IMG/VR virus record: IMGVR_UViG_3300027899_000001
Span: 310,001 to 374,000 of that record
DNA: 64,000 bases
Direction: 5' to 3' (one strand)
The position numbers were made by a program, and so were the translations under genes. Below the pieces are notes generated by a model, which ran no database searches, was not told the DNA's origin, and worked only from the letters and a program-made list of their open reading frames with translations. Positions 10,790-50,262 of this stretch are shown here, in pieces; position 1 is the stretch's first letter; every line of letters starts with the position of its first letter.

Positions 10790-11077
10790 CTATTGTTTTA
10801 AATGAATGATATTTTCTATTTTTTGTTTTAGAGTTATTTCGTGTCTATCTTTTCTTATGTAATTATTCCAAATGTATATTGATATTGTGAATACAAATAC
10901 TGTCACAATAAATACTTTAATAAGATACGGAACAATGCTAATAAGTTTCTTAAATTTTTGAGTAAGTTTTAAAAAGAAATGATCACTATGATAAATACTT
11001 GGATCACATTTATTAAATTTATATTTATTATCTTTAATAAAAGTTTCAATATTTTCTTCTGTCCATTCCATAATCAA
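10790..11077 (-). CDS. Hypothetical single-pass membrane protein
   Basis: ORF track. Confidence 0.55.
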   Translation of the reverse strand: MIMEWTEENIETFIKDNKYKFNKCDPSIYHSDHFFLKLTQKFKKLISIVPYLIKVFIVTVFVFTISIYIWNNYIRKDRHEITLKQKIENIIHLKQ

Positions 11078-11301
11078 TCTTTATAGTACAAATATAATTA
11101 AAATATATGAATAAATCATTAAAATGTTGTTAAAAAATTGTTAATGACTATTATATTATATTTATTCATCCTGTAATTCCAAAGGCTTTAAGAAAATATA
11201 AAACACCGGCAATAATTAGTATAATTACTATTATGCCAAATAATTTAAAGCATCCGCCTAAACAAGAACATCCACTTTCCATATAATATAGTTTTAATTT
11301 G

Positions 11302-23299: not shown

Positions 23300-23302
23300 G
23301 TG

Positions 23303-23387
23303 TGGAAGGTAAGGGATTCGAACCCATGTGAACTATTCGCCTCTTGCTTGTAAAGCAAGTGCTCTGAACCAGCTGAGCTAACCTTCC
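23303..23387 (-). tRNA. trnV-TAC: tRNA-Val(TAC) with long variable arm
   Basis: CTTGC-TTTACAA-GCAAG then AGGCGAATAGTTCAC extra arm. Confidence 0.8.
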
Positions 23388-23632: not shown

Positions 23633-23641
23633 TAAAATTTG

Positions 23642-23726
23642 CGTTTGGTGAAGGATTCGAACCTTCGATCGGATTTCTCTCGACGGATTAACAGTCCGTT
23701 GTCGTGGGCCACTTGACTAACCAAAC
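23642..23726 (-). tRNA. trnN-GTT: tRNA-Asn(GTT) on Tyr-like class II body
   Basis: ACGGA-CTGTTAA-TCCGT, long V-arm, G73. Confidence 0.8.
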
Positions 23727-24931: not shown

Positions 24932-24937
24932 TTTTTG

Positions 24938-25020
24938 CACGTAAGGTAGGATTCGAACCCACGAACTCTTTCGAGGCTGGTTTTGGAGACCAGTGCCTTT
25001 AACCACTCGGCAACTTACGC
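24938..25020 (-). tRNA. trnW-CCA: tRNA-Trp(CCA) with long variable arm
   Basis: CTGGT-CTCCAAA-ACCAG plus CTC-GAAA-GAG arm, Ser/Leu-type D-arm, G73. Confidence 0.8.
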
Positions 25021-25969: not shown

Positions 25970-26082
25970 ACTGAGAAAATTTAGAAGAATAAATTGCCGC
26001 GCCATTGCGGCTATTTCCCCTTATTATTATTTGGCGGGGAAATTCAGAATCGAACCGATGTAATTCTTACAGTTACTACAGT
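25970..26082 (-). ncRNA. YrlA-type Y RNA (Ro-binding stem plus permuted tRNA-like domain)
   Basis: ACTG-T-AG/CT-CAGT ends; T-arm TCGG-TTCGATT-CTGA; loop-closed acceptor TTTCCCC-GCCA..GGGGAAA; D-like arm GCCGC..GCGGC. Confidence 0.8.
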
Positions 26083-26610: not shown

Positions 26611-27210
26611 TTATTTTCTAATAATATGATTATTTATTTTTTGAGGCATAGCTGCTTCTATTAGTTTATCTGAAAATTGAATATTAGGACATTTCTTTTG
26701 CGCTTTTTCAAGAAATACTTTATACTCGTTTATATATTTTTTATAGTTCGCGTATACATAAATTAATCTATTGCTTTCTCCAATTGCTATTGTATTTGAG
26801 TCTCCTACTCTTTGAACAGTTAAAAATTTAGATTTTGTAGGAAGAACTGTAGTCCAATTTTTATTTGTTTCTTGTAGTACTAATTGTTCAGCTTTTAACA
26901 CTGAAAGAATATCATTGTGAATATTATTAGGTCTAAATTCTAAAAATAAATCTCCGTTTTCTATTATTACTCCTCTAACATCTTTTCCAAAATTGGTTAA
27001 ATATTCTGGATTTCTCCATATTATAAAATCTTCATTTCTATAAAAAGGTTTTTTATCTCCTTTAAGTTTTTGTTTTTCTTGTTCTTCTTTATACTTTTTT
27101 TCAAATTCTTCATGTTCTCTTGGAACTCTTGATAAATTAGAATCTTGAGCAATAAACTTATCTGATATACTCTCTTCTATTTTAATATTTTCACGAACAA
27201 TCTTTAACAT
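26611..27210 (-). CDS. Hypothetical protein with KIVRE-type N-terminus
   Basis: ORF track. Confidence 0.65.
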   Translation of the reverse strand: MLKIVRENIKIEESISDKFIAQDSNLSRVPREHEEFEKKYKEEQEKQKLKGDKKPFYRNEDFIIWRNPEYLTNFGKDVRGVIIENGDLFLEFRPNNIHNDILSVLKAEQLVLQETNKNWTTVLPTKSKFLTVQRVGDSNTIAIGESNRLIYVYANYKKYINEYKVFLEKAQKKCPNIQFSDKLIEAAMPQKINNHIIRK

Positions 27211-27902: not shown

Positions 27903-28103
27903 TTATTCTTCTTTTATATAAGCGTTTTTTACTTTAACGTTTTTCTTTACAGCATTTATAAACTGCCATGGATTTTCAATTCCATAAATTTCTTTTCTAT
28001 AATTATTATCATATATTATGACTACACAATATGTAACAGGTTTAAGAGGCACATACCCATTAAAAAAGGATTTTGGATTATATGATTTAAAAAAATCACT
28101 CAT
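27903..28103 (-). CDS. Hypothetical protein
   Basis: ORF track. Confidence 0.55.
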   Translation of the reverse strand: MSDFFKSYNPKSFFNGYVPLKPVTYCVVIIYDNNYRKEIYGIENPWQFINAVKKNVKVKNAYIKEE

Positions 28104-28441
28104 TTATGTACTTTAAATCCTTTATCTTTTAGTAGTGCTTGTATACCAGATCTATACCAACTAAACGCAGTTTGAGGATTACCTTTAACTGTAATATATT
28201 TTGTAATAAAATCTCCTATTTTTTGATCATATTTATGAGGAAACCAGTTATCAGCAGATCTTATTATATCTTCAGGAATTTCACGTGTTTCTAAGATTTG
28301 ATGTAAATGATCTACTATCCATTTATCTAATTCTAACCAAGTATTAAAATCGCGATGTACATAAAGTCCAATTCCCATATCTTCTATAGGATCCGATTCT
28401 TCTTTAAATACTTCATTTATATTTTCTCTAACTAATTTCAT
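28100..28441 (-). CDS. DPIxDMGIG-motif family protein
   Basis: MKLVRENINEVFKEESDPIEDMGIG. Confidence 0.75.
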   Translation of the reverse strand: MKLVRENINEVFKEESDPIEDMGIGLYVHRDFNTWLELDKWIVDHLHQILETREIPEDIIRSADNWFPHKYDQKIGDFITKYITVKGNPQTAFSWYRSGIQALLKDKGFKVHK

Positions 28442-29262
28442 TCGTAAAAAGGCATTTTAACTTTACAAATCTTTCTAATTTTCGCTTCAGTAATTCCATA
28501 ATGCATAGACATACAAACAGTTCCATCTATTCTTTTTGGAAATCCTTTTAATGATCTTATATCGTTATCTGATGCATTAAAATCTTCTTTTACATATTCA
28601 GGAAATCCTATGCATGATTGTATAGTTCCTGGAACACAAAAATTTCCATACACATGGTGAAATTTAATATATTCAGGAAGTTTTTTATATTTTGGATAAG
28701 TATTTCTAACACAATATAAATTTACTTGACCTTGTACTGTAATGCTTAAATCTTTATTTATAGTATAATCAATAATATTCATTTCTTTAAGCCAATCTTT
28801 AATCTTTTTAATGATTCCTATACCCATGTCTTGAATAGGATCAGTATCTTCAGCAAATTTTTCATTAACTGATTCATTTATTTTTAATACATCAAAATAT
28901 TCGTCCCAAACTTCTATAGGGGCAGATCCATATGTATAATAATATCCTCCCGAATCTATATACCTTCTTGCTGTTATAGCGTTCTGCACATTATCTCCAA
29001 AATTAATTATTACTAAACTTAAAATATTTTTTTCTTTGTTTACTTCTTTAACTATACTAGTATTGCCTTTACGAATTCTTGCGGTGACCTTTTCAATATT
29101 TTCGTCAAAAATAATATCATTGTTTTTTTGATATAAATCTTGTTTAACTATAATTATATCTCCTTTCTTTATTCTCGTAAATTTAGATCCAATACCTAAA
29201 TCCCATATGGGATCAGTTCCTTGTTCAAATTTTTCATTTATATGTTCTTTTACTATTTTCAT
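28438..29262 (-). CDS. DPIxDMGIG-motif protein with two motif-headed domains
   Basis: Motif at N-terminus and internally (NEKFAEDTDPIQDMGIG). Confidence 0.8.
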   Translation of the reverse strand: MKIVKEHINEKFEQGTDPIWDLGIGSKFTRIKKGDIIIVKQDLYQKNNDIIFDENIEKVTARIRKGNTSIVKEVNKEKNILSLVIINFGDNVQNAITARRYIDSGGYYYTYGSAPIEVWDEYFDVLKINESVNEKFAEDTDPIQDMGIGIIKKIKDWLKEMNIIDYTINKDLSITVQGQVNLYCVRNTYPKYKKLPEYIKFHHVYGNFCVPGTIQSCIGFPEYVKEDFNASDNDIRSLKGFPKRIDGTVCMSMHYGITEAKIRKICKVKMPFYE

Positions 29263-29286
29263 ATATTCTATTTATCTAACAAAACA

Positions 29287-29316
29287 AAAGGCCAAGATTA
29301 TAAAACCTTGGCCTTT
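29287..29316 (-). terminator. Intrinsic terminator after long Y-like RNAs
   Basis: AAAGGCCAAG...CTTGGCCTTT plus T-run. Confidence 0.8.
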
Positions 29317-29325
29317 CAATATCGT

Positions 29326-29583
29326 CTGAGAAAAATTAGGAAGCGTGTTTTTATAAGTTGTCTCTTATGCTCTAACCTACTTATCAATCTGTCCTGTACG
29401 TGATTAAAAGACGCCTAAGACACCGCACCTTCGGGAATTACGGCCCTTTCGGGAAAATTGATGTTCAGAATCAAGAGCGCTGTCATAGTTTGAATTTATC
29501 TAGGTTGCCGAAATCCATCAGCTGGGTTTTAACTATGTTGCCATAGAAAAAAGGTTTCGAAGTACCGCTTGACCTTACTACAG
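29326..29583 (-). ncRNA. Long Y-like RNA (258 nt) with unknown multibranch insert
   Basis: CTGTAGTAAGG..TACTTCGAAACC 5' motif, TTCTCAG 3' motif, several GNRA-capped hairpins. Confidence 0.65.
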
Positions 29584-29600: not shown

Positions 29601-29826
29601 ACTGAGAATTGTTGTTTTGTGCGTTTTAAGGAATTATCTTTCCGAAAATCGTTGCGGTGATTTTCAATACCGTGCTGTGTTGTGTAGGCCGAAGCCGCAA
29701 ACCTTGAGCGTTATTTAACTGATTTAATTGGCATTGCTGCCGATCAATAGTATGACTCTTTCGAGCCAGAAGTTGCCGAGGCAACGTTTTGTTGGTTTCG
29801 AAGTATCACAAAAACTTCACTACAGT
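29601..29826 (-). ncRNA. Long Y-like RNA (226 nt) with tetraloop-rich insert
   Basis: ACTGTAGTGAAG..TACTTCGAAACC; GGCTC-GAAA-GAGTC, GGCA-GCAA-TGCC, GGC-TTCG-GCC; TTCTCAGT. Confidence 0.65.
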
Positions 29827-29942
29827 TTTATTATTAAAAATTTTAAAGAACTTTTATATACTATATATGGATTTAAAAAGTATTAGTTTTATAACTTAAT
29901 GCATTTATTTCATTAATATATAAAATAAAAGTAGTAAGTTTT

Positions 29943-30518
29943 ATGATTAAAGAAGAAAAACATCATTATGTATATTTAACTACTAATCTTATCAATGGTA
30001 AACAATATATTGGTGATAGAACATGTAAATGTAATCCTGAAAATGATAAGTATTTAGGAAGTGGCAGACCATATTTTCAAAATGCTATTAAAGAATATGG
30101 AAAAAATAATTTTAGCAAACAAATACTTGAATGTTTTAATACAAGAGAAGAAGCTTTTAATGCCCAAGAAAAATATATTATACAATATAATACGCTTATT
30201 CCTAATGGATATAATATAAGTCCTAAAGGTGGCCATAATGTTAAAGAATGTTGGAGCAAAGAATCTAAAGAAAAATGCAGTAACACTAAAAAAGGAAAAA
30301 TTGGATATTGGAAAAATAAAAAATTATCAGAAGAACATATTAAACATTTAAAAGAAAATCATAAAGGAATGTTAGGAAAATATCATTCAGATGATTCTAA
30401 ATTACAACTTAGTAATTCAATGAAAATCAAAAATAACGGAAAAGAAACAGAAGAACATAAACAAAAAATAAAATTAAGTATGCAAAATTATTGGGCAAAA
30501 AAGAAATTAGTGCATTAA
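29943..30518 (+). CDS. GIY-YIG homing endonuclease with NUMOD3-like repeats
   Basis: YVYLTTNLINGKQYIG, YLGSG, GYNISPKGG; opposite strand. Confidence 0.85.
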   Translation: MIKEEKHHYVYLTTNLINGKQYIGDRTCKCNPENDKYLGSGRPYFQNAIKEYGKNNFSKQILECFNTREEAFNAQEKYIIQYNTLIPNGYNISPKGGHNVKECWSKESKEKCSNTKKGKIGYWKNKKLSEEHIKHLKENHKGMLGKYHSDDSKLQLSNSMKIKNNGKETEEHKQKIKLSMQNYWAKKKLVH

Positions 30519-30736: not shown

Positions 30737-31951
30737 TTATTTTATATTAAGTTGATATTTACAAAATTCTATCATTTTTTCATCTCCTGTATGTTTTCCT
30801 TCTGAATCAGACAATTTAATACAAGGTACCCATTCATCGTCAGGATCAGGTTTTGCTGCAATTAGTTTAATAACCATATTAAGTGGGTTAACTCCAACAT
30901 CATTAGATAAATTTGTGCCTATTCCCATTGCGCATTTAATTTCTTTATTACATGATTTTGTTAATTCAATTGCAAGATCAGGATTAAGATTATCTGAAAA
31001 AATTATAGTTTTATCATTGGGGTCAATTCCCATACTTTGATAATGTTTAATAACTTTTTCTGCAAAATGAAATGGATTTCCACTATCATGTCTTACACCA
31101 TCAAAAAGCTTTGAGAATTTTTTTCCAAATGATTTAAAGAATGATTCTGTTGTAAATGTATCTGTAAGAGCAATTCCAAGATCACCTTGATAAACATTTG
31201 ACCAGTTTTCAAGAGCTAAAAAATTTGCTTGTTTAAATCCATATTTTGCAGCATGAAACATAAACCATTCATGTGCATGAGTTCCTATTGGAGTAAGATT
31301 AAACATATGAGCAAAGTGTACATTAGAAGTTCCATTAAAATTATCTCTCATACTAAATGCTAAATCTTCTACAACTTCTTTTTGATTTTCATATGAATAT
31401 CTTCTACGAGTTCCAAATTCAGAAATCTTAACTCCATGATTATTAAATAATGCAGCTTTTTTTAGATTATTTTGTTCTCTTTCTACTCTTGAATTTATTT
31501 TTTCTCCCGTCATTTTAAAATACAATTCAGATATAAGAGCAAGAAGTGGAACTTCCCAAAGAATTGTACGATACCAGTAGCCTTCTACAGTTACTTGAAG
31601 TTCACTTCCATTTTGTATAACTCCAACTTCTGAAGGATTATATCTATATCCTGCCAAAAAATCAAAATACGCAGGATCGATATATTTACATTTAGTTTCA
31701 AAGAAGTGTTTTTCTGCAGTCAAAAGTTTAAGAGAAGACATATGAGAAATTTGTAATCTTAGTTCTTCTGCAAATCCTTCTGGAAAATTTACTTTTGAAC
31801 GAACTATTAATGCATATTTAACTTTTGCTCTTGGAAAAAGTTTTAACACTGCATTCATCATACTAAATTTATAAAGATCGTTATCGAGTATTGATGTAAT
31901 TATAGGTTCCATTTTATATTTTTTTAGCATGAAAATAAGTGACTCCATCAA
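30737..31951 (-). CDS. pncB: Nicotinate phosphoribosyltransferase
   Basis: SILDNDLYKFSM, EFGTRRR, GTHAHEW, LTDT, GVRHDSG, KLSDSEGK. Confidence 0.95.
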   Translation of the reverse strand: MMESLIFMLKKYKMEPIITSILDNDLYKFSMMNAVLKLFPRAKVKYALIVRSKVNFPEGFAEELRLQISHMSSLKLLTAEKHFFETKCKYIDPAYFDFLAGYRYNPSEVGVIQNGSELQVTVEGYWYRTILWEVPLLALISELYFKMTGEKINSRVEREQNNLKKAALFNNHGVKISEFGTRRRYSYENQKEVVEDLAFSMRDNFNGTSNVHFAHMFNLTPIGTHAHEWFMFHAAKYGFKQANFLALENWSNVYQGDLGIALTDTFTTESFFKSFGKKFSKLFDGVRHDSGNPFHFAEKVIKHYQSMGIDPNDKTIIFSDNLNPDLAIELTKSCNKEIKCAMGIGTNLSNDVGVNPLNMVIKLIAAKPDPDDEWVPCIKLSDSEGKHTGDEKMIEFCKYQLNIK

Positions 31952-32381
31952 TTTCTGTCATATCAAGAATTTTAAATTGATATGCACTAAATAATGCTGT
32001 TACAATTCTTGGTGTTAACGATCTATCAATTTTATTATCTAATAAATTAAATATAACATCTATAAGCTTTCCATATAATATATGAGTTTTTAAACTCAAC
32101 ATAGGTTTACTTGCTATAAATTTTCCATATACATAAGTATTCTTTTTTAAAAGATTATTAAAATCTTTAATAGTATCGTCTAAATATTTAATTTCATTTA
32201 ATTTTTTAAGATGAACAAGCGTTTTAATTCCTTTTAGTTCATCTTTATCATAGAAATAAAAATGTTTTCCCGAAAGAAATAAAACTTTTTCATCTTTAAC
32301 TTTTTTATGTTTTTGCACATATGCATGCATAACATGATCATATGTTTCATCTTTATATTGAATATCATTAAAACTTTTCAT
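31914..32381 (-). CDS. Hypothetical protein
   Basis: ORF track. Confidence 0.55.
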   Translation of the reverse strand: MKSFNDIQYKDETYDHVMHAYVQKHKKVKDEKVLFLSGKHFYFYDKDELKGIKTLVHLKKLNEIKYLDDTIKDFNNLLKKNTYVYGKFIASKPMLSLKTHILYGKLIDVIFNLLDNKIDRSLTPRIVTALFSAYQFKILDMTEIDGVTYFHAKKI

Positions 32382-32383
32382 TA

Positions 32384-32749
32384 TTATCTTATTCTAAATG
32401 TATCAAAAAATGTTCTAAACGATAGTCTTTTTTTCAAAATTATTGTTTCAGATACGTATTGAGTATCATTTTCATAATATTTTGTTCCTTTAGGAATTAT
32501 GAATTTAAATACAGTTAAGTAAGAATGAGCATCATCTGCCGCAATTTTAAAACTTTTATATGAATGATAGCCTATGTTAATAGAAACTTGATCATAATAA
32601 AAAGTAGCATCAAATTCTACTTTTTTATTTAAAAGATTTTTAGTATATTGAAAATCTGTAAACCAAGATATTCCTCTTCTAGTCATAGTTTTATAACAAA
32701 CTATATCTTTTTTTGCTGTTTTAAGAACATTTTTTCCAGTAAAACACAT
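32384..32749 (-). CDS. Hypothetical phage protein
   Basis: TAKKDIVCYK...GYHSY...FIIPKGTKYY. Confidence 0.6.
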   Translation of the reverse strand: MCFTGKNVLKTAKKDIVCYKTMTRRGISWFTDFQYTKNLLNKKVEFDATFYYDQVSINIGYHSYKSFKIAADDAHSYLTVFKFIIPKGTKYYENDTQYVSETIILKKRLSFRTFFDTFRIR

Positions 32750-32760
32750 ATTTTTAATTT

Positions 32761-33665
32761 TTAAAAGATTAGACTTCCTTCATCATCCCAACGACAATAT
32801 AATTTACTATTTTCTCTTAAGATAACATATTTAAGAGATTCGTTATTGCCTTTAGACATACAATCATCATCAATAACAACTGACATTCCATTTATAGAAT
32901 AAACTTTTGCACCAAACGGAAGAGTATAAAGAAATTCACCATTTCCCGCCTTTTTAGGAAACATTCTCTCAGTTCCTATATATGCATTTTCTCCTGTAAT
33001 ATATTTCTTAATAGCACTTATAGTTTCGTCTTTACATGCATTTTCTTTAACCCATTCACCTTCGTCATTTATAATAAATCCATCTTTATCTAACTCATAA
33101 TATATTTTTCTAAAAGTAACTTGATTTGCACCAAGAAATTTACATCTAGCTATAATTTCTTTTGGAGTATGATTATCATATTCTTTTAACATATTAAGAC
33201 TTAAACGAATATTAAATCCTCGTGATTTAAGTAAAGAAATTAATTCTGATAAGTTAAATTTTAATTTTTTAGAAACTCCAATTATATTTAAATTATTTTC
33301 ATCAGAAAAAATATCAGCAACAGAAAGACTTATCGTATTTACTTGAAGTTTTTGTAATAATCAATATTATCATCATCTAATAATACTCCAGTAGTTTGTA
33401 ACTCAACATTAGGAAATGGATAATTTAAATCTTTAAATAAAACAGATAAAACTTTTAAGAAATTTGTATTTTGCAAAGCTTCTCCTGTTCCTGTAAGAAT
33501 ACAAGTATTTACTCCATTCATTACAGCATACTTAATACGTTTTTCTATTTGAATATACATAAAAGTATCTTCATATGGAGAATCATGCATTCTACTTACA
33601 CAAAATGGACATTTATTTACACAACTTTTTGTAGGAACTACGATAGAAATTGTCTAAATGTTCAT
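32761..33665 (-). pseudogene. Radical SAM protein interrupted by TAG at codon 4 and a 1-nt frameshift near 33360
   Basis: MNI*TISIVVPTKSCVNKCPFCVSRMH (CxxxCxxC), LTGTGE, ELQTTG; continues in the -1 frame LQKLQVNTISLSV into ORF 32761..33192. Confidence 0.75.
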
Positions 33666-33731
33666 ATATTAATTATTATTGTGTAAATATAATACTAATT
33701 TCTGAATTAAAAAAATATTTTGCTATTTATT

Positions 33732-34382
33732 TTAAATATTTCCTATAAAAGAAAGTGTAAGAGAATCTACATAATAAACTTTAGCTTGTGTAAAAGCTTC
33801 TATAGTTTCTGACAAATCTGAATTTATTGATTTACACGCATCTTCAATAACATATGTATTAAAACCTTCCATTGCTGCATCTATTGCAGTTTCTTTCACA
33901 CAATAATCTAGAGCTAAACCACATACGTAAACTTCAACTACATTTCTTTCATTAAGAAAATCTTGAAGTTTTTTAGGAGCATCTGGATTTATTATTTTTG
34001 ATCTATCAAATGCACTATAAACATGATTATTCCTTTCCATGCCTTTTTTAAAGATATAAAAATCTTTTTTGCATTTTGATAAATTCAGATCTGGATGAAA
34101 TGAAGCACCTAATGTATCTGCTACACAATGATCAGGCCAAAGAATATCTTTTTCTCCATTTTCTCTTACGTAACTATCGTAAACAGAAGCTCCGGGATGT
34201 TGTGAGGCGAAAGCATCCATTTCTGGATCATGCCAATCTTGTGTAAATATAACTAAATCAAATCTTTCAAGGAGATCATTAACTACGGGTACAATTTTGT
34301 CTCCATCTGGTACTGCTAGTGATCCTCCAGGGCAAAAATCTCTTTGCAAATCGATCACTATTAATGCTTTTTTCTTTATCAT
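33732..34382 (-). CDS. pncA: Nicotinamidase
   Basis: VIDLQRDFCPGGSLAV, TQDWH, WPDHCV, GLALDYCVKETA. Confidence 0.95.
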   Translation of the reverse strand: MIKKKALIVIDLQRDFCPGGSLAVPDGDKIVPVVNDLLERFDLVIFTQDWHDPEMDAFASQHPGASVYDSYVRENGEKDILWPDHCVADTLGASFHPDLNLSKCKKDFYIFKKGMERNNHVYSAFDRSKIINPDAPKKLQDFLNERNVVEVYVCGLALDYCVKETAIDAAMEGFNTYVIEDACKSINSDLSETIEAFTQAKVYYVDSLTLSFIGNI

Positions 34383-34538
34383 ATCATCTTATAGTTTGAA
34401 TTTCATATTCATCATATCCATCTCTTGATTCATCTGAATCTATACATACAATTTCTAATCCAAATGATTGTAAAGCGTCTGATATATTGTCTACAATTTC
34501 ATCAGCTCTATCATCATAATCTACTCTAAATTTTGATT

Positions 34539-35474
34539 TCATAATTCTTCCTTTTTATTTTTAACATATCTATTGTATATACTATTTTCATTTTCTATTA
34601 TATCGTGTCTATATATATTGACAGGATTATTTCTTTTGAATTGAGATTTTAAATGTCGTTGAATGACAGAGTGTTGACGCATTTTATTAATTTCATCCAT
34701 ATATACTGCATTAACAGTTGGTGAATGTTTTTCAATAAAGTCTAAATATTCTTTAAGTATTCTATCAACTTCTTTATAACCATCTCTAGAATTTCCTGTC
34801 CAGTCTGGCATTATTTGTCCAAGATCTCCAAGATTTGTAACTCCAAGGCCATCAGTTGCAAGTGCAGTTATCGTATTTATTATTGTACTTCCTGCTTCAT
34901 AATTTCCAGCATATTCATTCATAGTTAACCATTCTGCCATATCATATACTTCTGTTTTCCAAAGATTTTGTATCATACCATAATCACCTACATCACCATG
35001 AAGAGTCCAAAAACCAAGAAGAAATTCTGTATAATTATCAGTAGAAAGAACTATTCCACGATGATATGAAGCTAAATCATACAAATAAATCATACGCAGT
35101 CTTGCTTTAAGATTTCCATTACGTATACGACTTGATGAACCTTCAGGATTAGGCGCATGAAACAGCATATTAGATTCCATTTTGGAATACATAAAATTAT
35201 ATTCTTCTTCAACGCTATGCTCTAAGAATTTTGTACAAAATACTTTTCCTGTTAATTTGGCTCTTTCTAATTCTTCTGGTTGATTTGAACTTACTGGCAA
35301 ACTTCTTCCTATAAGTGGAATATTTAATTCATCACAAACTGGTCTAGCAAGTGCTGCGCAAAGACAACTATCTATTCCACCTGAAATCCCTATAATAAGA
35401 GACTTTATATTATTGTTTGTAATATACAGACTTAATTCTTTTCGAATATTCGATACTGCTATTTGATAATTCAT
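34539..35474 (-). CDS. nadE: NH3-dependent NAD synthetase
   Basis: GISGGIDS, NLKARLRM, STDNYTE, FWTLHGD, KTEVY. Confidence 0.9.
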   Translation of the reverse strand: MNYQIAVSNIRKELSLYITNNNIKSLIIGISGGIDSCLCAALARPVCDELNIPLIGRSLPVSSNQPEELERAKLTGKVFCTKFLEHSVEEEYNFMYSKMESNMLFHAPNPEGSSSRIRNGNLKARLRMIYLYDLASYHRGIVLSTDNYTEFLLGFWTLHGDVGDYGMIQNLWKTEVYDMAEWLTMNEYAGNYEAGSTIINTITALATDGLGVTNLGDLGQIMPDWTGNSRDGYKEVDRILKEYLDFIEKHSPTVNAVYMDEINKMRQHSVIQRHLKSQFKRNNPVNIYRHDIIENENSIYNRYVKNKKEEL

Positions 35475-35743: not shown

Positions 35744-36247
35744 TTATAAATCATTTTCTTTGTGTTTACACCAAGTTAGATATTCATCTTGATCTCTTAT
35801 CCATTGTAATAATTCTGGATCAGTAACTTGTTCATGTTCTATTTTAGACCATAATTCGTTATCTCTTTCATTTTTATCATATTGATTAACGAAATATATT
35901 TTCTTAATTCCCGCTGCTATTATATTTTTCAAACATTCACTGCAAGGTTCAAGTATACAATAAAGTTCTGCTTCTTCAATAGCAATTCCATGTTTGGCTG
36001 CAAAATTAATAGCATTCATTTCAGCATGAACCTCATATTTTTTAGACCAATTATGATGGGCTTCTCTATCAGTTAGAAAATTATAATTAGGAAAATGATC
36101 ACAACAATTTTCAAATCCTTTAGGTGTCCCATTTATTCCCGTGGAAATAATTCTTCTATCATGAACAATAAGAGCTCCCACTTGTCTTGAGACACATTTA
36201 GATTCTTGTCCAAGTAAATATGCTGTTTTAAGAAAGAAATGTTTCAT
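35744..36247 (-). CDS. dCMP deaminase
   Basis: SKCVSRQVGA, HAEMNAI, PCSEC. Confidence 0.9.
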   Translation of the reverse strand: MKHFFLKTAYLLGQESKCVSRQVGALIVHDRRIISTGINGTPKGFENCCDHFPNYNFLTDREAHHNWSKKYEVHAEMNAINFAAKHGIAIEEAELYCILEPCSECLKNIIAAGIKKIYFVNQYDKNERDNELWSKIEHEQVTDPELLQWIRDQDEYLTWCKHKENDL

Positions 36248-49880: not shown

Positions 49881-49945
49881 ATTTATGGCTGGTGATTTGA
49901 ATCCCATTTAATCGTTCTACCTTAACGAACCATATTTTTTATTTG

Positions 49946-50026
49946 CTGCCCTGAGTGGATTCGAACCACTATCCCAAGTTTCAAAGACTCAGATAATTAA
50001 CTTTCGCACCTTTATACGACAGGGCA
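49946..50026 (-). tRNA. trnQ-TTG: tRNA-Gln(TTG) with small GC-GAAA-GT D-loop insertion
   Basis: Acceptor TGCCCTG/CAGGGCA, G73, loop CT-TTG-AA. Confidence 0.7.
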
Positions 50027-50030
50027 ATAA

Positions 50031-50100
50031 ACTGAGAAATTCGGTTAGAGCATTTTTTCTAATTTCCAGGTTTCGAAGTATCTCTTTACCTTACTACAGT
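50031..50100 (-). ncRNA. Short Y-like RNA
   Basis: ACTG-T-AG/CT-CAGT, GGTAAAGAG/CTCTAACC, TACTTCGAAACC. Confidence 0.7.
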
Positions 50101-50184: not shown

Positions 50185-50262
50185 GTTGAGAAATGTGGAG
50201 TGAGTGTCTTTTTTATTAGATTTGCATGTCTTTTACGAAGTAACTCATTTCCTTACTACAAC
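50185..50262 (-). ncRNA. Short Y-like RNA
   Basis: GTTG-T-AG/CT-CAAC, GGAAATGAGT/ACTCACTCC, TACTTCG. Confidence 0.7.

What the first reader, a model, noticed from the sequence alone, without database searches (positions are those of the whole stretch)
29326..29583. 258-nt Y-like RNA carrying an unknown ~190-nt structured module
Seen: the same terminal stem and TACTTCGAAACC motif as the short copies, but the loop is replaced by a multibranch insert (CTATG-GCAA-CATAG, GCTG/CAGC, GCTCT/AGAGC, CCC-GAAA-GGG, CCGTA/TGCGG); own terminator at 29287. Established: Y RNAs are modular, a Ro-binding stem plus an effector domain (PNPase tether, tRNA mimic). Inference: a new effector domain, possibly a protein scaffold or ribozyme.
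Basis: partly seen in the sequence, partly recalled or inferred. Interest (0 to 1): 0.75.

Follow-up and report, generated by a model that had tools for sequence, protein, structure and literature searches.

The report
Long Y-like RNA of a jumbo phage
This is a 258-base non-coding RNA gene of a 405-kb freshwater phage: its ends form the handle of a new family of Y-like RNAs that travels with a phage Ro60 (Rsr) protein gene, and its middle is a roughly 200-base folded insert of unknown partner that three other phage lineages also carry, whole or in part.

Summary
Window 29326-29583 (minus strand) has the same terminal stem and TACTTCGAAACC motif as two ~70-nt copies near 50.1 kb, a ~200-nt GC-enriched insert, and a strong terminator.

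The Y RNA reading is well supported. The window encodes a full-length Ro60/Rsr homolog (36814-38517). Six RNAs in the window share the 'clamp', and one lies ~380 nt upstream of rsr on the same strand. Rsr orthologs occur in 12 of 16 clamp-bearing contigs and in none of 11 chance-hit contigs. The clamp shows strong covariation and has no Rfam family.

In relatives the clamp carries nothing, whole or circularly permuted tRNA bodies (the YrlA layout), a piece identical to 23S rRNA, or long modules.

The insert of this RNA has one full-length homolog, one broken copy and partial metagenomic copies. These show compensatory changes in three helices, two invariant blocks and a hairpin shared with the other long forms. 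Its 5' half is not conserved, its folding energy is unremarkable, and no RNA data were found.

The likeliest role is an Rsr-bound Y RNA whose insert is an effector (tether or decoy) domain; its partner is unknown. I class it as a new variant of a known kind.

The parts
29326..29583 (-). Long Y-like RNA 'A' (258 nt), the finding
   Evidence: Clamp plus insert read directly. The ends are set by the P1 pairing CUG/CAG; no RNA-seq ends are available.
29553..29583 (-). 5' half of the clamp: P1 (CUG), UAGUAAGG, P2 5' strand (AAGCG), GUACUUCGAAACC motif containing CGAA
   Evidence: Family alignment and pair counts. UAGU, ACUUCG and neighbouring bases are invariant in the 13 short forms.
29326..29352 (-). 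3' half of the clamp: AAAAAC, P2 3' strand (CGCUU), CC-UAAUUUUUCU, P1 (CAG)
   Evidence: Same calls. P1 and P2 keep pairing through double changes between this RNA and L114 (pairs 3:258 and 18:241).
29353..29552 (-). Insert of about 200 nt (the module)
   Evidence: 40% GC, no Rfam match at E<=10, no long open frame.
29533..29546 (-). First hairpin, CUAUG-GCAA-CAUAG
   Evidence: In the minimum-energy fold. The other long forms (B and its relatives) also start with a tetraloop-capped hairpin right after the motif. The full-length A-type homolog in L114 has none at this place.
29474..29478 (-). Closing helix of the core domain, 5' strand GCUCU (pairs with 29369-29373)
   Evidence: L114 has GUUCUC/GAGAAC at the same place, where one pair changes from C:G to U:A.
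29369..29373 (-). Closing helix, 3' strand AGAGC
   Evidence: As above.
29444..29453 (-). Hairpin CCC-GAAA-GGG
   Evidence: It reads CCUC-GAAA-GAGG in L114 and in a divergent metagenomic copy. The compensatory pair was counted by RNAalifold (pair 133:140).
29423..29443 (-). Hairpin CCGUA-AUU-CC-CGAA-GG-UGCGG
   Evidence: Same shape with different letters: UCGA-A-CCC-CACG-GGG-UCGA in L114 and CCG-GA-CUC-UACG-GAG-CGG in run X2's loose end.
29407..29419 (-). Block CUUAGGCGUCUUU: invariant in this phage, L114 and the metagenomic copies; the first 11 bases also in L111
29353..29368 (-). Last hairpin AUAAG-AGACAA-CUUAU
   Evidence: Identical in the three A-type phages. The other long forms keep a hairpin with an ARNNAA loop at this place on different stems: GGAG/CUCC, GGAA/UUCC, CCGGAG/CUCC.
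29285..29318 (-). Intrinsic terminator after A
   Evidence: 15-bp stem plus U run.
29602..29825 (-). Long Y-like RNA 'B', 18 nt upstream of A, probably co-transcribed
   Evidence: Same clamp, fold z = -2.56, homologs in L019 and L111.
36814..38517 (-). Ro60/Rsr homolog (567 aa), the likely protein partner
   Evidence: Pfam TROVE 36.4 bits against a cut-off of 23. It aligns over residues 17-189 and 250-556 with the solved phage Ro60 (9KOP/9L5Y, E 5e-14), including the DxSGSM site.
38895..38971 (-). Short Y-like RNA 'F', about 380 nt upstream of rsr
   Evidence: Model R1, 54.4 bits. TTGACT...TATAAT just upstream and a hairpin plus U run downstream, read from the sequence.
25970..26082 (-). Y-like RNA 'E' with a permuted tRNA-like domain (YrlA layout)
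   Evidence: (32.1 bits).
50031..50100 (-). Short Y-like RNA 'C'
   Evidence: 76.1 bits.
50185..50262 (-). Short Y-like RNA 'D'
   Evidence: 73.7 bits.

Best explanation
RNA A is a non-coding Y RNA of the phage. Its paired 5' and 3' ends, the bulged UAGUAAG/AAUUUCU helix and the adjacent UACUUCGAA (CGAA) motif form a conserved handle. By analogy with known Ro60-Y RNA pairs, the phage's own Ro60/Rsr ring protein binds this handle. The ~200-nt insert sits where other family members carry a tRNA look-alike. It is the effector part: a folded domain that either brings Rsr, and whatever nuclease Rsr works with (most likely host PNPase), to a partner, or holds a partner away from it.

Shown: the family, its structure, its linkage to rsr, and the conservation of part of the insert. 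Inferred: Rsr binding, co-transcription with B from one promoter followed by processing, and the tether or gate role. Unknown: the partner of the insert.
For: 1. The clamp is a real, structured family.
- In 13 short forms, 94% of cells pair, against 40-52% when partners are slid. Six pairs change on both sides.
- In 37 model matches, 93% pair and 13 of 15 pairs change on both sides. That alignment is fitted to the model.

2. Linkage to Ro60.
- The window encodes a TROVE + vWA protein on the same strand.
- Family members lie directly next to rsr on the same strand in this phage and in L001, L007, L014, L019, L021, L031 and L041.
- Rsr orthologs of 30-83% identity are found in 12 of 16 clamp-bearing contigs, most of them fragments under 10% complete.
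- TROVE is found in 0 of 11 contigs that matched the search pattern by chance.

3. Same build as known Y RNAs: a terminal 5'/3' stem and a CGAA motif in the loop next to it. These criteria were used to identify the Yrl RNAs that the closest solved homolog, Thermus phage Ro60, binds (PMC12135203).
- Relatives with the same clamp have the T arm, closed acceptor stem and D arm order of YrlA (PMC4201824).
- One of them matches Rfam YrlA at 34.8 bits.

4. The insert is constrained.
- The blocks CUUAGGCGUCUUU and AAUAAGAGACAACUUAUAAAAAC are identical in a phage whose Rsr is only 66% identical.
- Three helices keep their shape with other letters.
- A natural GA>AG swap at 29388-29389 keeps both pairs of a predicted helix.
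- GNRA and UNCG-type loops cap GC-rich hairpins in a 29% GC genome.
Against: - No RNA run could be listed, so expression and the ends are unproven.
- Rsr binding is untested.
- The folding energy is not better than that of shuffles.
- The 5' 70 nt of the insert are not alignable with the only full-length homolog.
- The copy in L111 is broken by a homing-endonuclease remnant, so the RNA can be lost.
- A-type RNAs are rare: two JGI metagenome contigs and three viral-contig lineages.
- Co-occurrence with rsr could partly reflect common descent of these phages.
- A lies 7 kb from rsr, further than the 4 kb usual for bacterial YrlA.
- The genome has no PNPase, RtcB or Rnl2, so any nuclease partner must come from the host.
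Confidence: 0.55

Rival explanations
1. The insert is a decoy: a look-alike of a host RNA (an rRNA or tRNA segment, or another abundant RNA). It soaks up or misdirects a host enzyme or defence nuclease, and the clamp and Rsr mainly stabilise it.
For: The same clamp in relatives carries tRNA bodies. In L010 it carries a module with 22 of 22 bases identical to E. coli 23S rRNA 1912-1933, plus two weaker pieces from the same rRNA region (1651-1690, 1975-1987). The window is a 39-tRNA region.
Against: For A itself no significant similarity to E. coli 16S, 23S or 5S was found (best E 0.45). The pieces of A that resemble 23S are not kept in its homologs. The invariant blocks match nothing in the rRNA operon in either sense. 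The host, and so its RNAs, are unknown.
Confidence: 0.15
2. The clamp is a leader-trailer element of the phage tRNA cluster, a processing or stability signal for RNase P, RNase Z or RNase E, with no functional link to Rsr. A is then a stable structured RNA of some other function that uses the same ends.
For: All six copies lie among tRNA genes on the tRNA strand. In relatives the clamp flanks complete tRNAs that ARAGORN calls. UACUUCG then takes the place of the acceptor 5' strand.
Against: Most tRNAs in the window have no clamp. A copy sits next to rsr in at least eight contigs. Clamp RNAs with no cargo have nothing to process. The closest solved Ro60 binds RNAs of just this build encoded upstream of its gene (PMC12135203).
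Confidence: 0.13
3. A is a decaying duplicate: a Y RNA gene whose loop picked up junk or a mobile-element scar. The insert has no function.
For: The region is a homing-endonuclease hot spot: a GIY-YIG gene lies next to B and a truncated one is fused into the A-type copy of L111. The 5' part of the insert is not conserved, and folding energy is ordinary.
Against: There are invariant blocks and compensatory helices across phages with 66% identical Rsr. The clamp is intact. The insert has 40% GC and stable tetraloops. It has no similarity to the GIY-YIG gene or any open frame.
Confidence: 0.1
4. The insert is a self-cleaving or other ribozyme.
For: It is multi-helix, compact and conserved in part. 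Nothing more.
Against: No match to any Rfam ribozyme family at E<=10. By eye, from memory of the consensus, no hammerhead-type core. The only joints in the laid data are two go-backs at 29262 inside the neighbouring ORF, none within the RNA; those data are DNA contigs, so this says little.
Confidence: 0.03
5. A is a cis-acting leader (riboswitch or attenuator) of the downstream ORF 29262-28438.
For: It lies upstream of that ORF on the same strand and ends in a terminator.
Against: The terminator is separate from the clamp, with no alternative pairing seen. The downstream genes differ among this phage, L114 and L111. The RNA belongs to a family of free-standing RNAs.
Confidence: 0.02

Closest known systems
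Bacterial and phage YrlA / YrlB Y RNAs (Rfam RF02553; Chen et al. 2014, PMC4201824)
   Same: A terminal stem from the 5' and 3' ends, a short CGAA-containing motif near the 5' strand, and genes next to and co-oriented with a Ro60/Rsr gene. There are several Y RNAs per genome, some processed from one precursor. Family members E (window 25970-26082) and relatives have the YrlA order: T arm, closed acceptor stem, D arm.
   Different: The handle sequence is different: UAGUAAG...UACUUCGWAA...AAUUUCU rather than GNCGAAN0-1G. A gets no RF02553 match at all, and the best relative scores 34.8 bits against a threshold of 69. A has no tRNA-like domain but a ~200-nt multi-helix insert, which makes it about twice the length of the Rfam YrlA model (114 positions). 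Some relatives encode CCA in the acceptor loop.
Yrl1 / Yrl2 of Thermus phage phiLo with phiRo60 (PMC12135203; PDB 9KOP, 9L5Y)
   Same: The protein is the closest solved homolog of the window's Rsr. Its RNAs were identified by the same features: encoded upstream of the gene, with a 5'-3' stem flanking a large loop that holds CGAA. That RNP recruits host PNPase, and this phage, like phiLo, has no PNPase of its own.
   Different: The proteins are remote homologs (55 bits). The phiLo RNAs are reported as stem-bulge-stem RNAs, with no large modules or tRNA bodies described in the passages read. Binding has been shown there and not here.
Deinococcus radiodurans Yrn1 and metazoan Y RNAs
   Same: Modular logic: a Ro-binding bulged stem plus an effector part that tethers Ro to PNPase or gates its cavity (PMC4201824). 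The predicted clamp is also a bulged helix with invariant bases. Relatives with unpermuted tRNA bodies resemble the Yrn1 orientation.
   Different: There is no sequence similarity to GGUCCGA/UUGACC. The effector domain of A has no counterpart.

Membership tests
Y RNA / Y RNA-like (Ro60-associated ncRNA) | The 5' and 3' ends pair to form a terminal stem | tested here: met
   P1 and P2 covary across the family. In A: CUG/CAG and AAGCG/CGCUU.
Y RNA / Y RNA-like (Ro60-associated ncRNA) | Conserved CGAA-type motif on the 5' side next to the stem (GNCGAAN0-1G in YrlA; 'CGAA motif' in phage Yrls) | tested here: met
   A has UACUUCGAAACC. ACUUCG is invariant in the short forms. About half of the family has CGUAA instead of CGAA, and the G two bases before CGAA in the YrlA motif is U here, so the match is partial.
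Y RNA / Y RNA-like (Ro60-associated ncRNA) | Encoded near a Ro60/TROVE gene on the same strand | tested here: met
   rsr at 36814-38517 (-). A lies 7.2 kb away on the same strand, and family member F lies 380 nt upstream of rsr. The same linkage is seen in at least seven other contigs.
Y RNA / Y RNA-like (Ro60-associated ncRNA) | Bound by the Ro60 protein | not testable with these tools
   This needs EMSA or immunoprecipitation.
YrlA (Rfam RF02553) | Scores at or above the family's gathering threshold (69 bits) | tested here: not met
   No RF02553 match for A at E<=10. The relative L007:11179-11296 scores 34.8 bits.
YrlA (Rfam RF02553) | tRNA-like domain: T arm, acceptor-like stem-loop, D arm | tested here: not met
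   ARAGORN and the Rfam tRNA model find nothing in A, and no GTTCGA-type T loop is present. The feature is met by sister RNA E and by relatives.
Known self-cleaving ribozyme classes (Rfam) | Match to a ribozyme covariance model | tested here: not met
   None at E<=10.
rRNA mimic, as in the L010 clamp RNA | Significant sequence identity to a conserved rRNA segment that is kept among homologs | tested here: not met
   Best hit for A has E 0.45, and it falls in the clamp (bases 1-19), not in the insert. The similar stretches differ in L114 and X2. Only E. coli rRNA was available.

The most novel reading that the evidence does not exclude
The clamp is a universal Rsr handle that these jumbo phages use as a display platform. 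They plug different host-RNA look-alikes into it: whole tRNAs, permuted tRNAs, a 23S H69-H71 piece. The A-type and B-type modules would be further look-alikes or adaptors for host factors not yet recognised. The phage would thus field a set of Rsr RNPs, each aimed at a different part of the host translation or RNA-decay machinery, or at tRNA- and rRNA-cleaving defence nucleases.
Probability: 0.25. Interest if true: 0.85.

Novelty: new variant of a known kind. Interest (0 to 1): 0.6.

Why it matters
In bacteria, Y RNAs are known mainly as tRNA mimics of about 100 nt. How their effector domains choose partners is an open question.

This family shows one conserved Ro60 handle carrying interchangeable cargos within single phage genomes. 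The cargos include two ~200-nt modules with no known relative and, in a related phage, a piece identical to a universally conserved 23S rRNA segment.

That gives a natural series of cargo swaps for testing what a Y RNA effector domain does. It adds an uncatalogued RNA family (no Rfam model) for annotating huge phages. It also suggests that phage Ro60 RNPs are aimed at more targets than PNPase tethering alone.

Tried and rejected
- Rfam at gathering and at E<=10 on the locus: nothing but noise.
- BLAST of the locus against 50,697 phage records: no match.
- rRNA mimicry of A and B: word-based and Smith-Waterman comparisons with E. coli 16S, 23S and 5S gave nothing significant. With cheap gaps the test could not even separate the true L010 case, so only the word-based result counts. 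Three co-linear weak similarities of A to 23S 2084-2327, and one to 16S helix 27, were dropped because the matching letters are not kept in L114 or X2.
- Complementarity of the invariant blocks to the rRNA operon or to the phage genome: none.
- More A-type homologs: four dedicated pattern scans. The first 14-mer gave 63 loci, nearly all chance. The metagenome scan returned only this genome and the L080 contig. Two further scans added only L113 and L114.
- RNA-seq: no run could be listed. DNA contigs of four runs were laid instead.
- Formal pair counting on the A-type helices: the MAFFT alignments put the helices out of register, so those comparisons were read by eye and are marked as such.
- Hammerhead, Cas12a repeat handle, kink-turn, sarcin-ricin and retron resemblances, recalled from memory, were considered for the clamp. 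They were dropped for wrong core letters or wrong topology.
- Phage-encoded PNPase/RNase PH, RtcB and Rnl2: absent. The Rnl1 search was uninformative because its controls did not ring.

Full report
**Where we are.** The window is bases 310001-374000 of a single 405,016-bp virus record with terminal repeats and 28.8% GC. A freshwater metagenome run holds 97% of the locus. The window carries 39 tRNA genes, all on the minus strand. The finding lies on that strand too.

**The observation.**
- Read 5' to 3' on the minus strand, 29583->29326 begins CUG-UAGUAAGG, then AAGCG, then GUACUUCGAAACC. It ends CGCUU-CC-UAAUUUUUCU-CAG.
- The 12-mer occurs three times in the window, against 0.31 expected.
The exception is GCTG/CAGC, for which the fold prefers a local hairpin.
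- A 15-bp terminator follows at 29318-29285.
- The insert has 40% GC and no long open frame in any of the six frames.
- The fold is not more stable than shuffles (z = +0.29).
- A second long copy, B (29602-29825, z = -2.56), ends 18 nt before A starts. The two are probably one transcript.

**A family, not a pair.**
- A scan of viral contigs with the 5' signature returned 33 loci, about 20 of which are true members from related phages.
- All true members share one plan: four to six bases that pair with the last bases of the RNA (P1); UAGURA; a variable helix (P2); (U)UACUUCG; a loop; AAAAA; P2'; AAUUUCU; P1'.
- P1 reads CUG/CAG, UUG/CAA, AUG/CAU, GUAG/CUAC, CCG/CGG and so on.
- On an unfitted MAFFT alignment of 13 short forms, 94.4% of cells pair, against 40-52% with slid partners. 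Six pairs change on both sides, and no shuffle out of 500 reaches the observed covariation score.
- A covariance model built from these found 37 matches in the held sequences. 93% of cells pair and 13 of 15 pairs change on both sides; that alignment is fitted to the model.
- In this genome there are six members, all inside the window: A, B, C (50031-50100), D (50185-50262), E (25970-26082) and F (38895-38971).
- No Rfam family matches any of them.

**The Ro60 link.**
- The genome encodes a 567-aa protein at 36814-38517 on the same strand. It scores 36.4 bits on Pfam TROVE, against a cut-off of 23.
- It aligns over nearly its whole length with the solved Ro60 of Thermus phage phiLo (9KOP, 9L5Y; E 5e-14), including the DxSGSM metal site of the vWA domain.
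- RNA F lies about 380 nt upstream of this gene. A TTGACT...TATAAT pair sits just before it and a hairpin plus U run after it.
- Pfam TROVE was found in 8 of 24 records searched. Seven were clamp-bearing fragments and one was the ambiguous L018. None of the 11 records that had matched the pattern by chance had it, though several of those are complete.
- tblastn with the window's protein finds full-length orthologs of 30-83% identity, plus a partial one at a contig end (L014, 46% over 222 residues), in 12 of 16 clamp-bearing contigs. In L001, L007, L014, L019, L021, L031 and L041 a clamp RNA lies within a few hundred bases of the gene on the same strand.
- The four contigs without the gene are fragments of 14-32 kb.

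**Comparison with known Y RNAs.**
- Chen et al. (PMC4201824) describe YrlA as follows: a short motif GNCGAAN0-1G near the 5' end, then a variable arm, a T arm, a closed acceptor-like stem, a D arm, and a 3' end that pairs with the 5' end. It is encoded within 4 kb of rsr on the same strand.
- The phiLo study (PMC12135203) identified its two Ro60-binding RNAs by a 5'-3' stem flanking a large loop with a CGAA motif, upstream of the gene. It showed that the RNP recruits host PNPase.
- The present clamp meets these descriptive criteria. E in this window and relatives in L004, L007, L010 and L019 have exactly the YrlA order of tRNA parts inside the clamp, some with an encoded GCCA before the linker.
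- One such RNA, L007:11179-11296, is the only one to reach Rfam YrlA, at 34.8 bits against a threshold of 69.
- The family therefore works like YrlA and YrlB but does not meet the criteria of the Rfam family. Its handle sequence is its own.

**What the clamp carries.**
- Nothing: 60-78 nt RNAs.
- Complete or acceptor-shortened tRNAs in normal order: L007 Pro, Lys and Ile; L019, L025, L004 and L010.
- Permuted tRNA bodies.
- Long modules.
- In L010:10954-11228 the module contains 22 of 22 bases identical to E. coli 23S rRNA 1912-1933 (E 6e-5), plus weaker similarity to 1651-1690 and 1975-1987. This prompted a test of whether A or B imitate rRNA.
- They do not detectably do so. The best hits have E of 0.45 or more, the similar letters are not kept in homologs, and the invariant blocks match nothing.

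**The insert of A.**
- Homologs are scarce.
- Laying contigs of four metagenome runs showed three near-identical copies and two divergent partial ones.
- Pattern scans found a 3' half in L080 (the same contig as L111) and a full-length 209-nt RNA in L113 and L114.
- The phage of L114 has an Rsr only 66% identical to the window's.
- Read by eye from these sequences:
  1. The closing helix GCUCU/AGAGC is GUUCUC/GAGAAC in L114, with a C:G to U:A change.
  2. CCC-GAAA-GGG is CCUC-GAAA-GAGG in L114 and in a divergent X2 contig. RNAalifold also counted this change.
  3. The next hairpin keeps an outer stem, an inner stem and a tetraloop but changes nearly every letter: CCGUA..CC-CGAA-GG..UGCGG here, UCGA-A-CCC-CACG-GGG-UCGA in L114, and CCG-GA-CUC-UACG-GAG-CGG in X2.
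  4. CUUAGGCGUCUUU and AAUAAGAGACAACUUAUAAAAAC are invariant.
  5. The last hairpin, with loop AGACAA, recurs at the same place in the B, L013 and L003 types of long RNA with loop ARNNAA on other stems.
  6. The natural GA>AG swap at 29388-29389 keeps two U-purine pairs of a predicted helix.
- The 5' 70 nt of the insert do not align between the two full-length RNAs.
- Window 29369-29406 has no counterpart in L114.
- In L111 the 5' half has been replaced by a 41-codon remnant of a GIY-YIG gene. The RNA is therefore dispensable in at least one lineage.
- MAFFT put these helices out of register, so I could not obtain formal pair counts for them.

**Mechanism.**
- Shown: a structured, conserved handle; genomic linkage to a Ro60 gene; a partly conserved, helix-rich insert at the position where sister RNAs carry tRNA mimics.
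- Inferred from the named literature: Rsr binds the handle, and the insert is the effector that tethers or gates.
- The genome lacks PNPase/RNase PH, RtcB and Rnl2. Any nuclease or ligase partner would therefore be the host's, as in phiLo.
- The invariant, probably single-stranded CUUAGGCGUCUUU is the best candidate contact site. RNAalifold can also pair it with the equally invariant AAGAGAC, so its state is open.

**Verdict.** The insert is a real but thinly sampled structured module whose partner is unknown. It is a new variant of a known kind. The wider family, with its interchangeable cargos, is the more interesting result.

Noticed in passing
L010:10954-11228 (+): A 275-nt clamp RNA of a related phage. 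Its module contains 22/22 bases identical to E. coli 23S rRNA 1912-1933 (the helix 69-71 region, by my recollection), directly after UACUUCGA. It also has weaker pieces resembling 23S 1651-1690 and 1975-1987. It looks like a miniature of part of 23S rRNA inside a Y RNA handle.
   Followed up: partly
L007:7677-7804, 10891-11012, 11031-11154; L019:5017-5125; L025:8084-8188; L004:4070-4190; L010:8061-8178: Complete or acceptor-shortened tRNAs (Pro, Lys, Ile, Cys, Leu) sit in normal order inside the same clamp. UACUUCG takes the place of, or directly precedes, the acceptor 5' strand. It is unclear whether these are released as working tRNAs or stay as Y RNAs.
   Followed up: partly
window 25970-26082 (-): Family member E has, in order, a T arm, an acceptor 3' strand, GCCA, an 11-nt linker, an acceptor 5' strand and a D arm, all inside the clamp. 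This is the YrlA layout with an encoded CCA. It lies between tRNA-Gly and tRNA-Lys.
   Followed up: partly
window 49945-50026 (-): A tRNA-like element directly after Y RNA C has a perfect acceptor stem and T arm but aberrant D and anticodon arms. ARAGORN calls it only at relaxed settings, as tRNA-Gln with a 5-nt intron. Rfam does not call it.
   Followed up: partly
window 43926-43999 (-): A tRNA with anticodon CUA, which reads UAG (ARAGORN labels it 'Pyl'). The ORFs examined here are open under code 11, so no recoding was assumed.
   Followed up: no
L111:7345-7470 (same contig as L080): A 41-codon remnant of a GIY-YIG homing-endonuclease gene is fused into the A-type RNA and replaces its 5' half. 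An intact GIY-YIG gene lies upstream of the B-type RNA there, as it does in the window (29943-30518, +). The long-RNA locus seems to be a homing site.
   Followed up: partly
window 28438-29262, 28100-28441, 26611-27210 (-): Paralogous ORFs share an N-terminal stretch (MK.V.E.INE...DPI.DMGIG) and have no Pfam match. Many unrelated metagenome contigs lay on 29206-29275 at 80-90% identity, so this N-terminus is a widespread repeated module in these phages.
   Followed up: no
window 29845-29865 (-), and upstream of the long RNAs in L003, L013, L019, L111, L114: A conserved GTTCTTTRAA box lies about 20 nt before the 5' end of the first long RNA. It is possibly a phage-specific promoter element. F, by contrast, has a sigma-70-like TTGACT/TATAAT pair.
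   Followed up: no
window 30737-35474 (-): An NAD salvage and synthesis cluster: a 404-aa ORF that I read as nicotinate phosphoribosyltransferase-like and a 216-aa nicotinamidase-like ORF (both judged by eye from the translations, not scanned), plus NAD synthase (Pfam). A dCMP deaminase lies at 35744-36247 and a thioredoxin at 40827-41153.
   Followed up: no
window 23302-23387, 23641-23726, 24937-25020 (-): tRNA-Val, tRNA-Asn and tRNA-Trp are 84-86 nt long with an extra stretch in the variable region, which is unusual for these tRNA identities.
   Followed up: no
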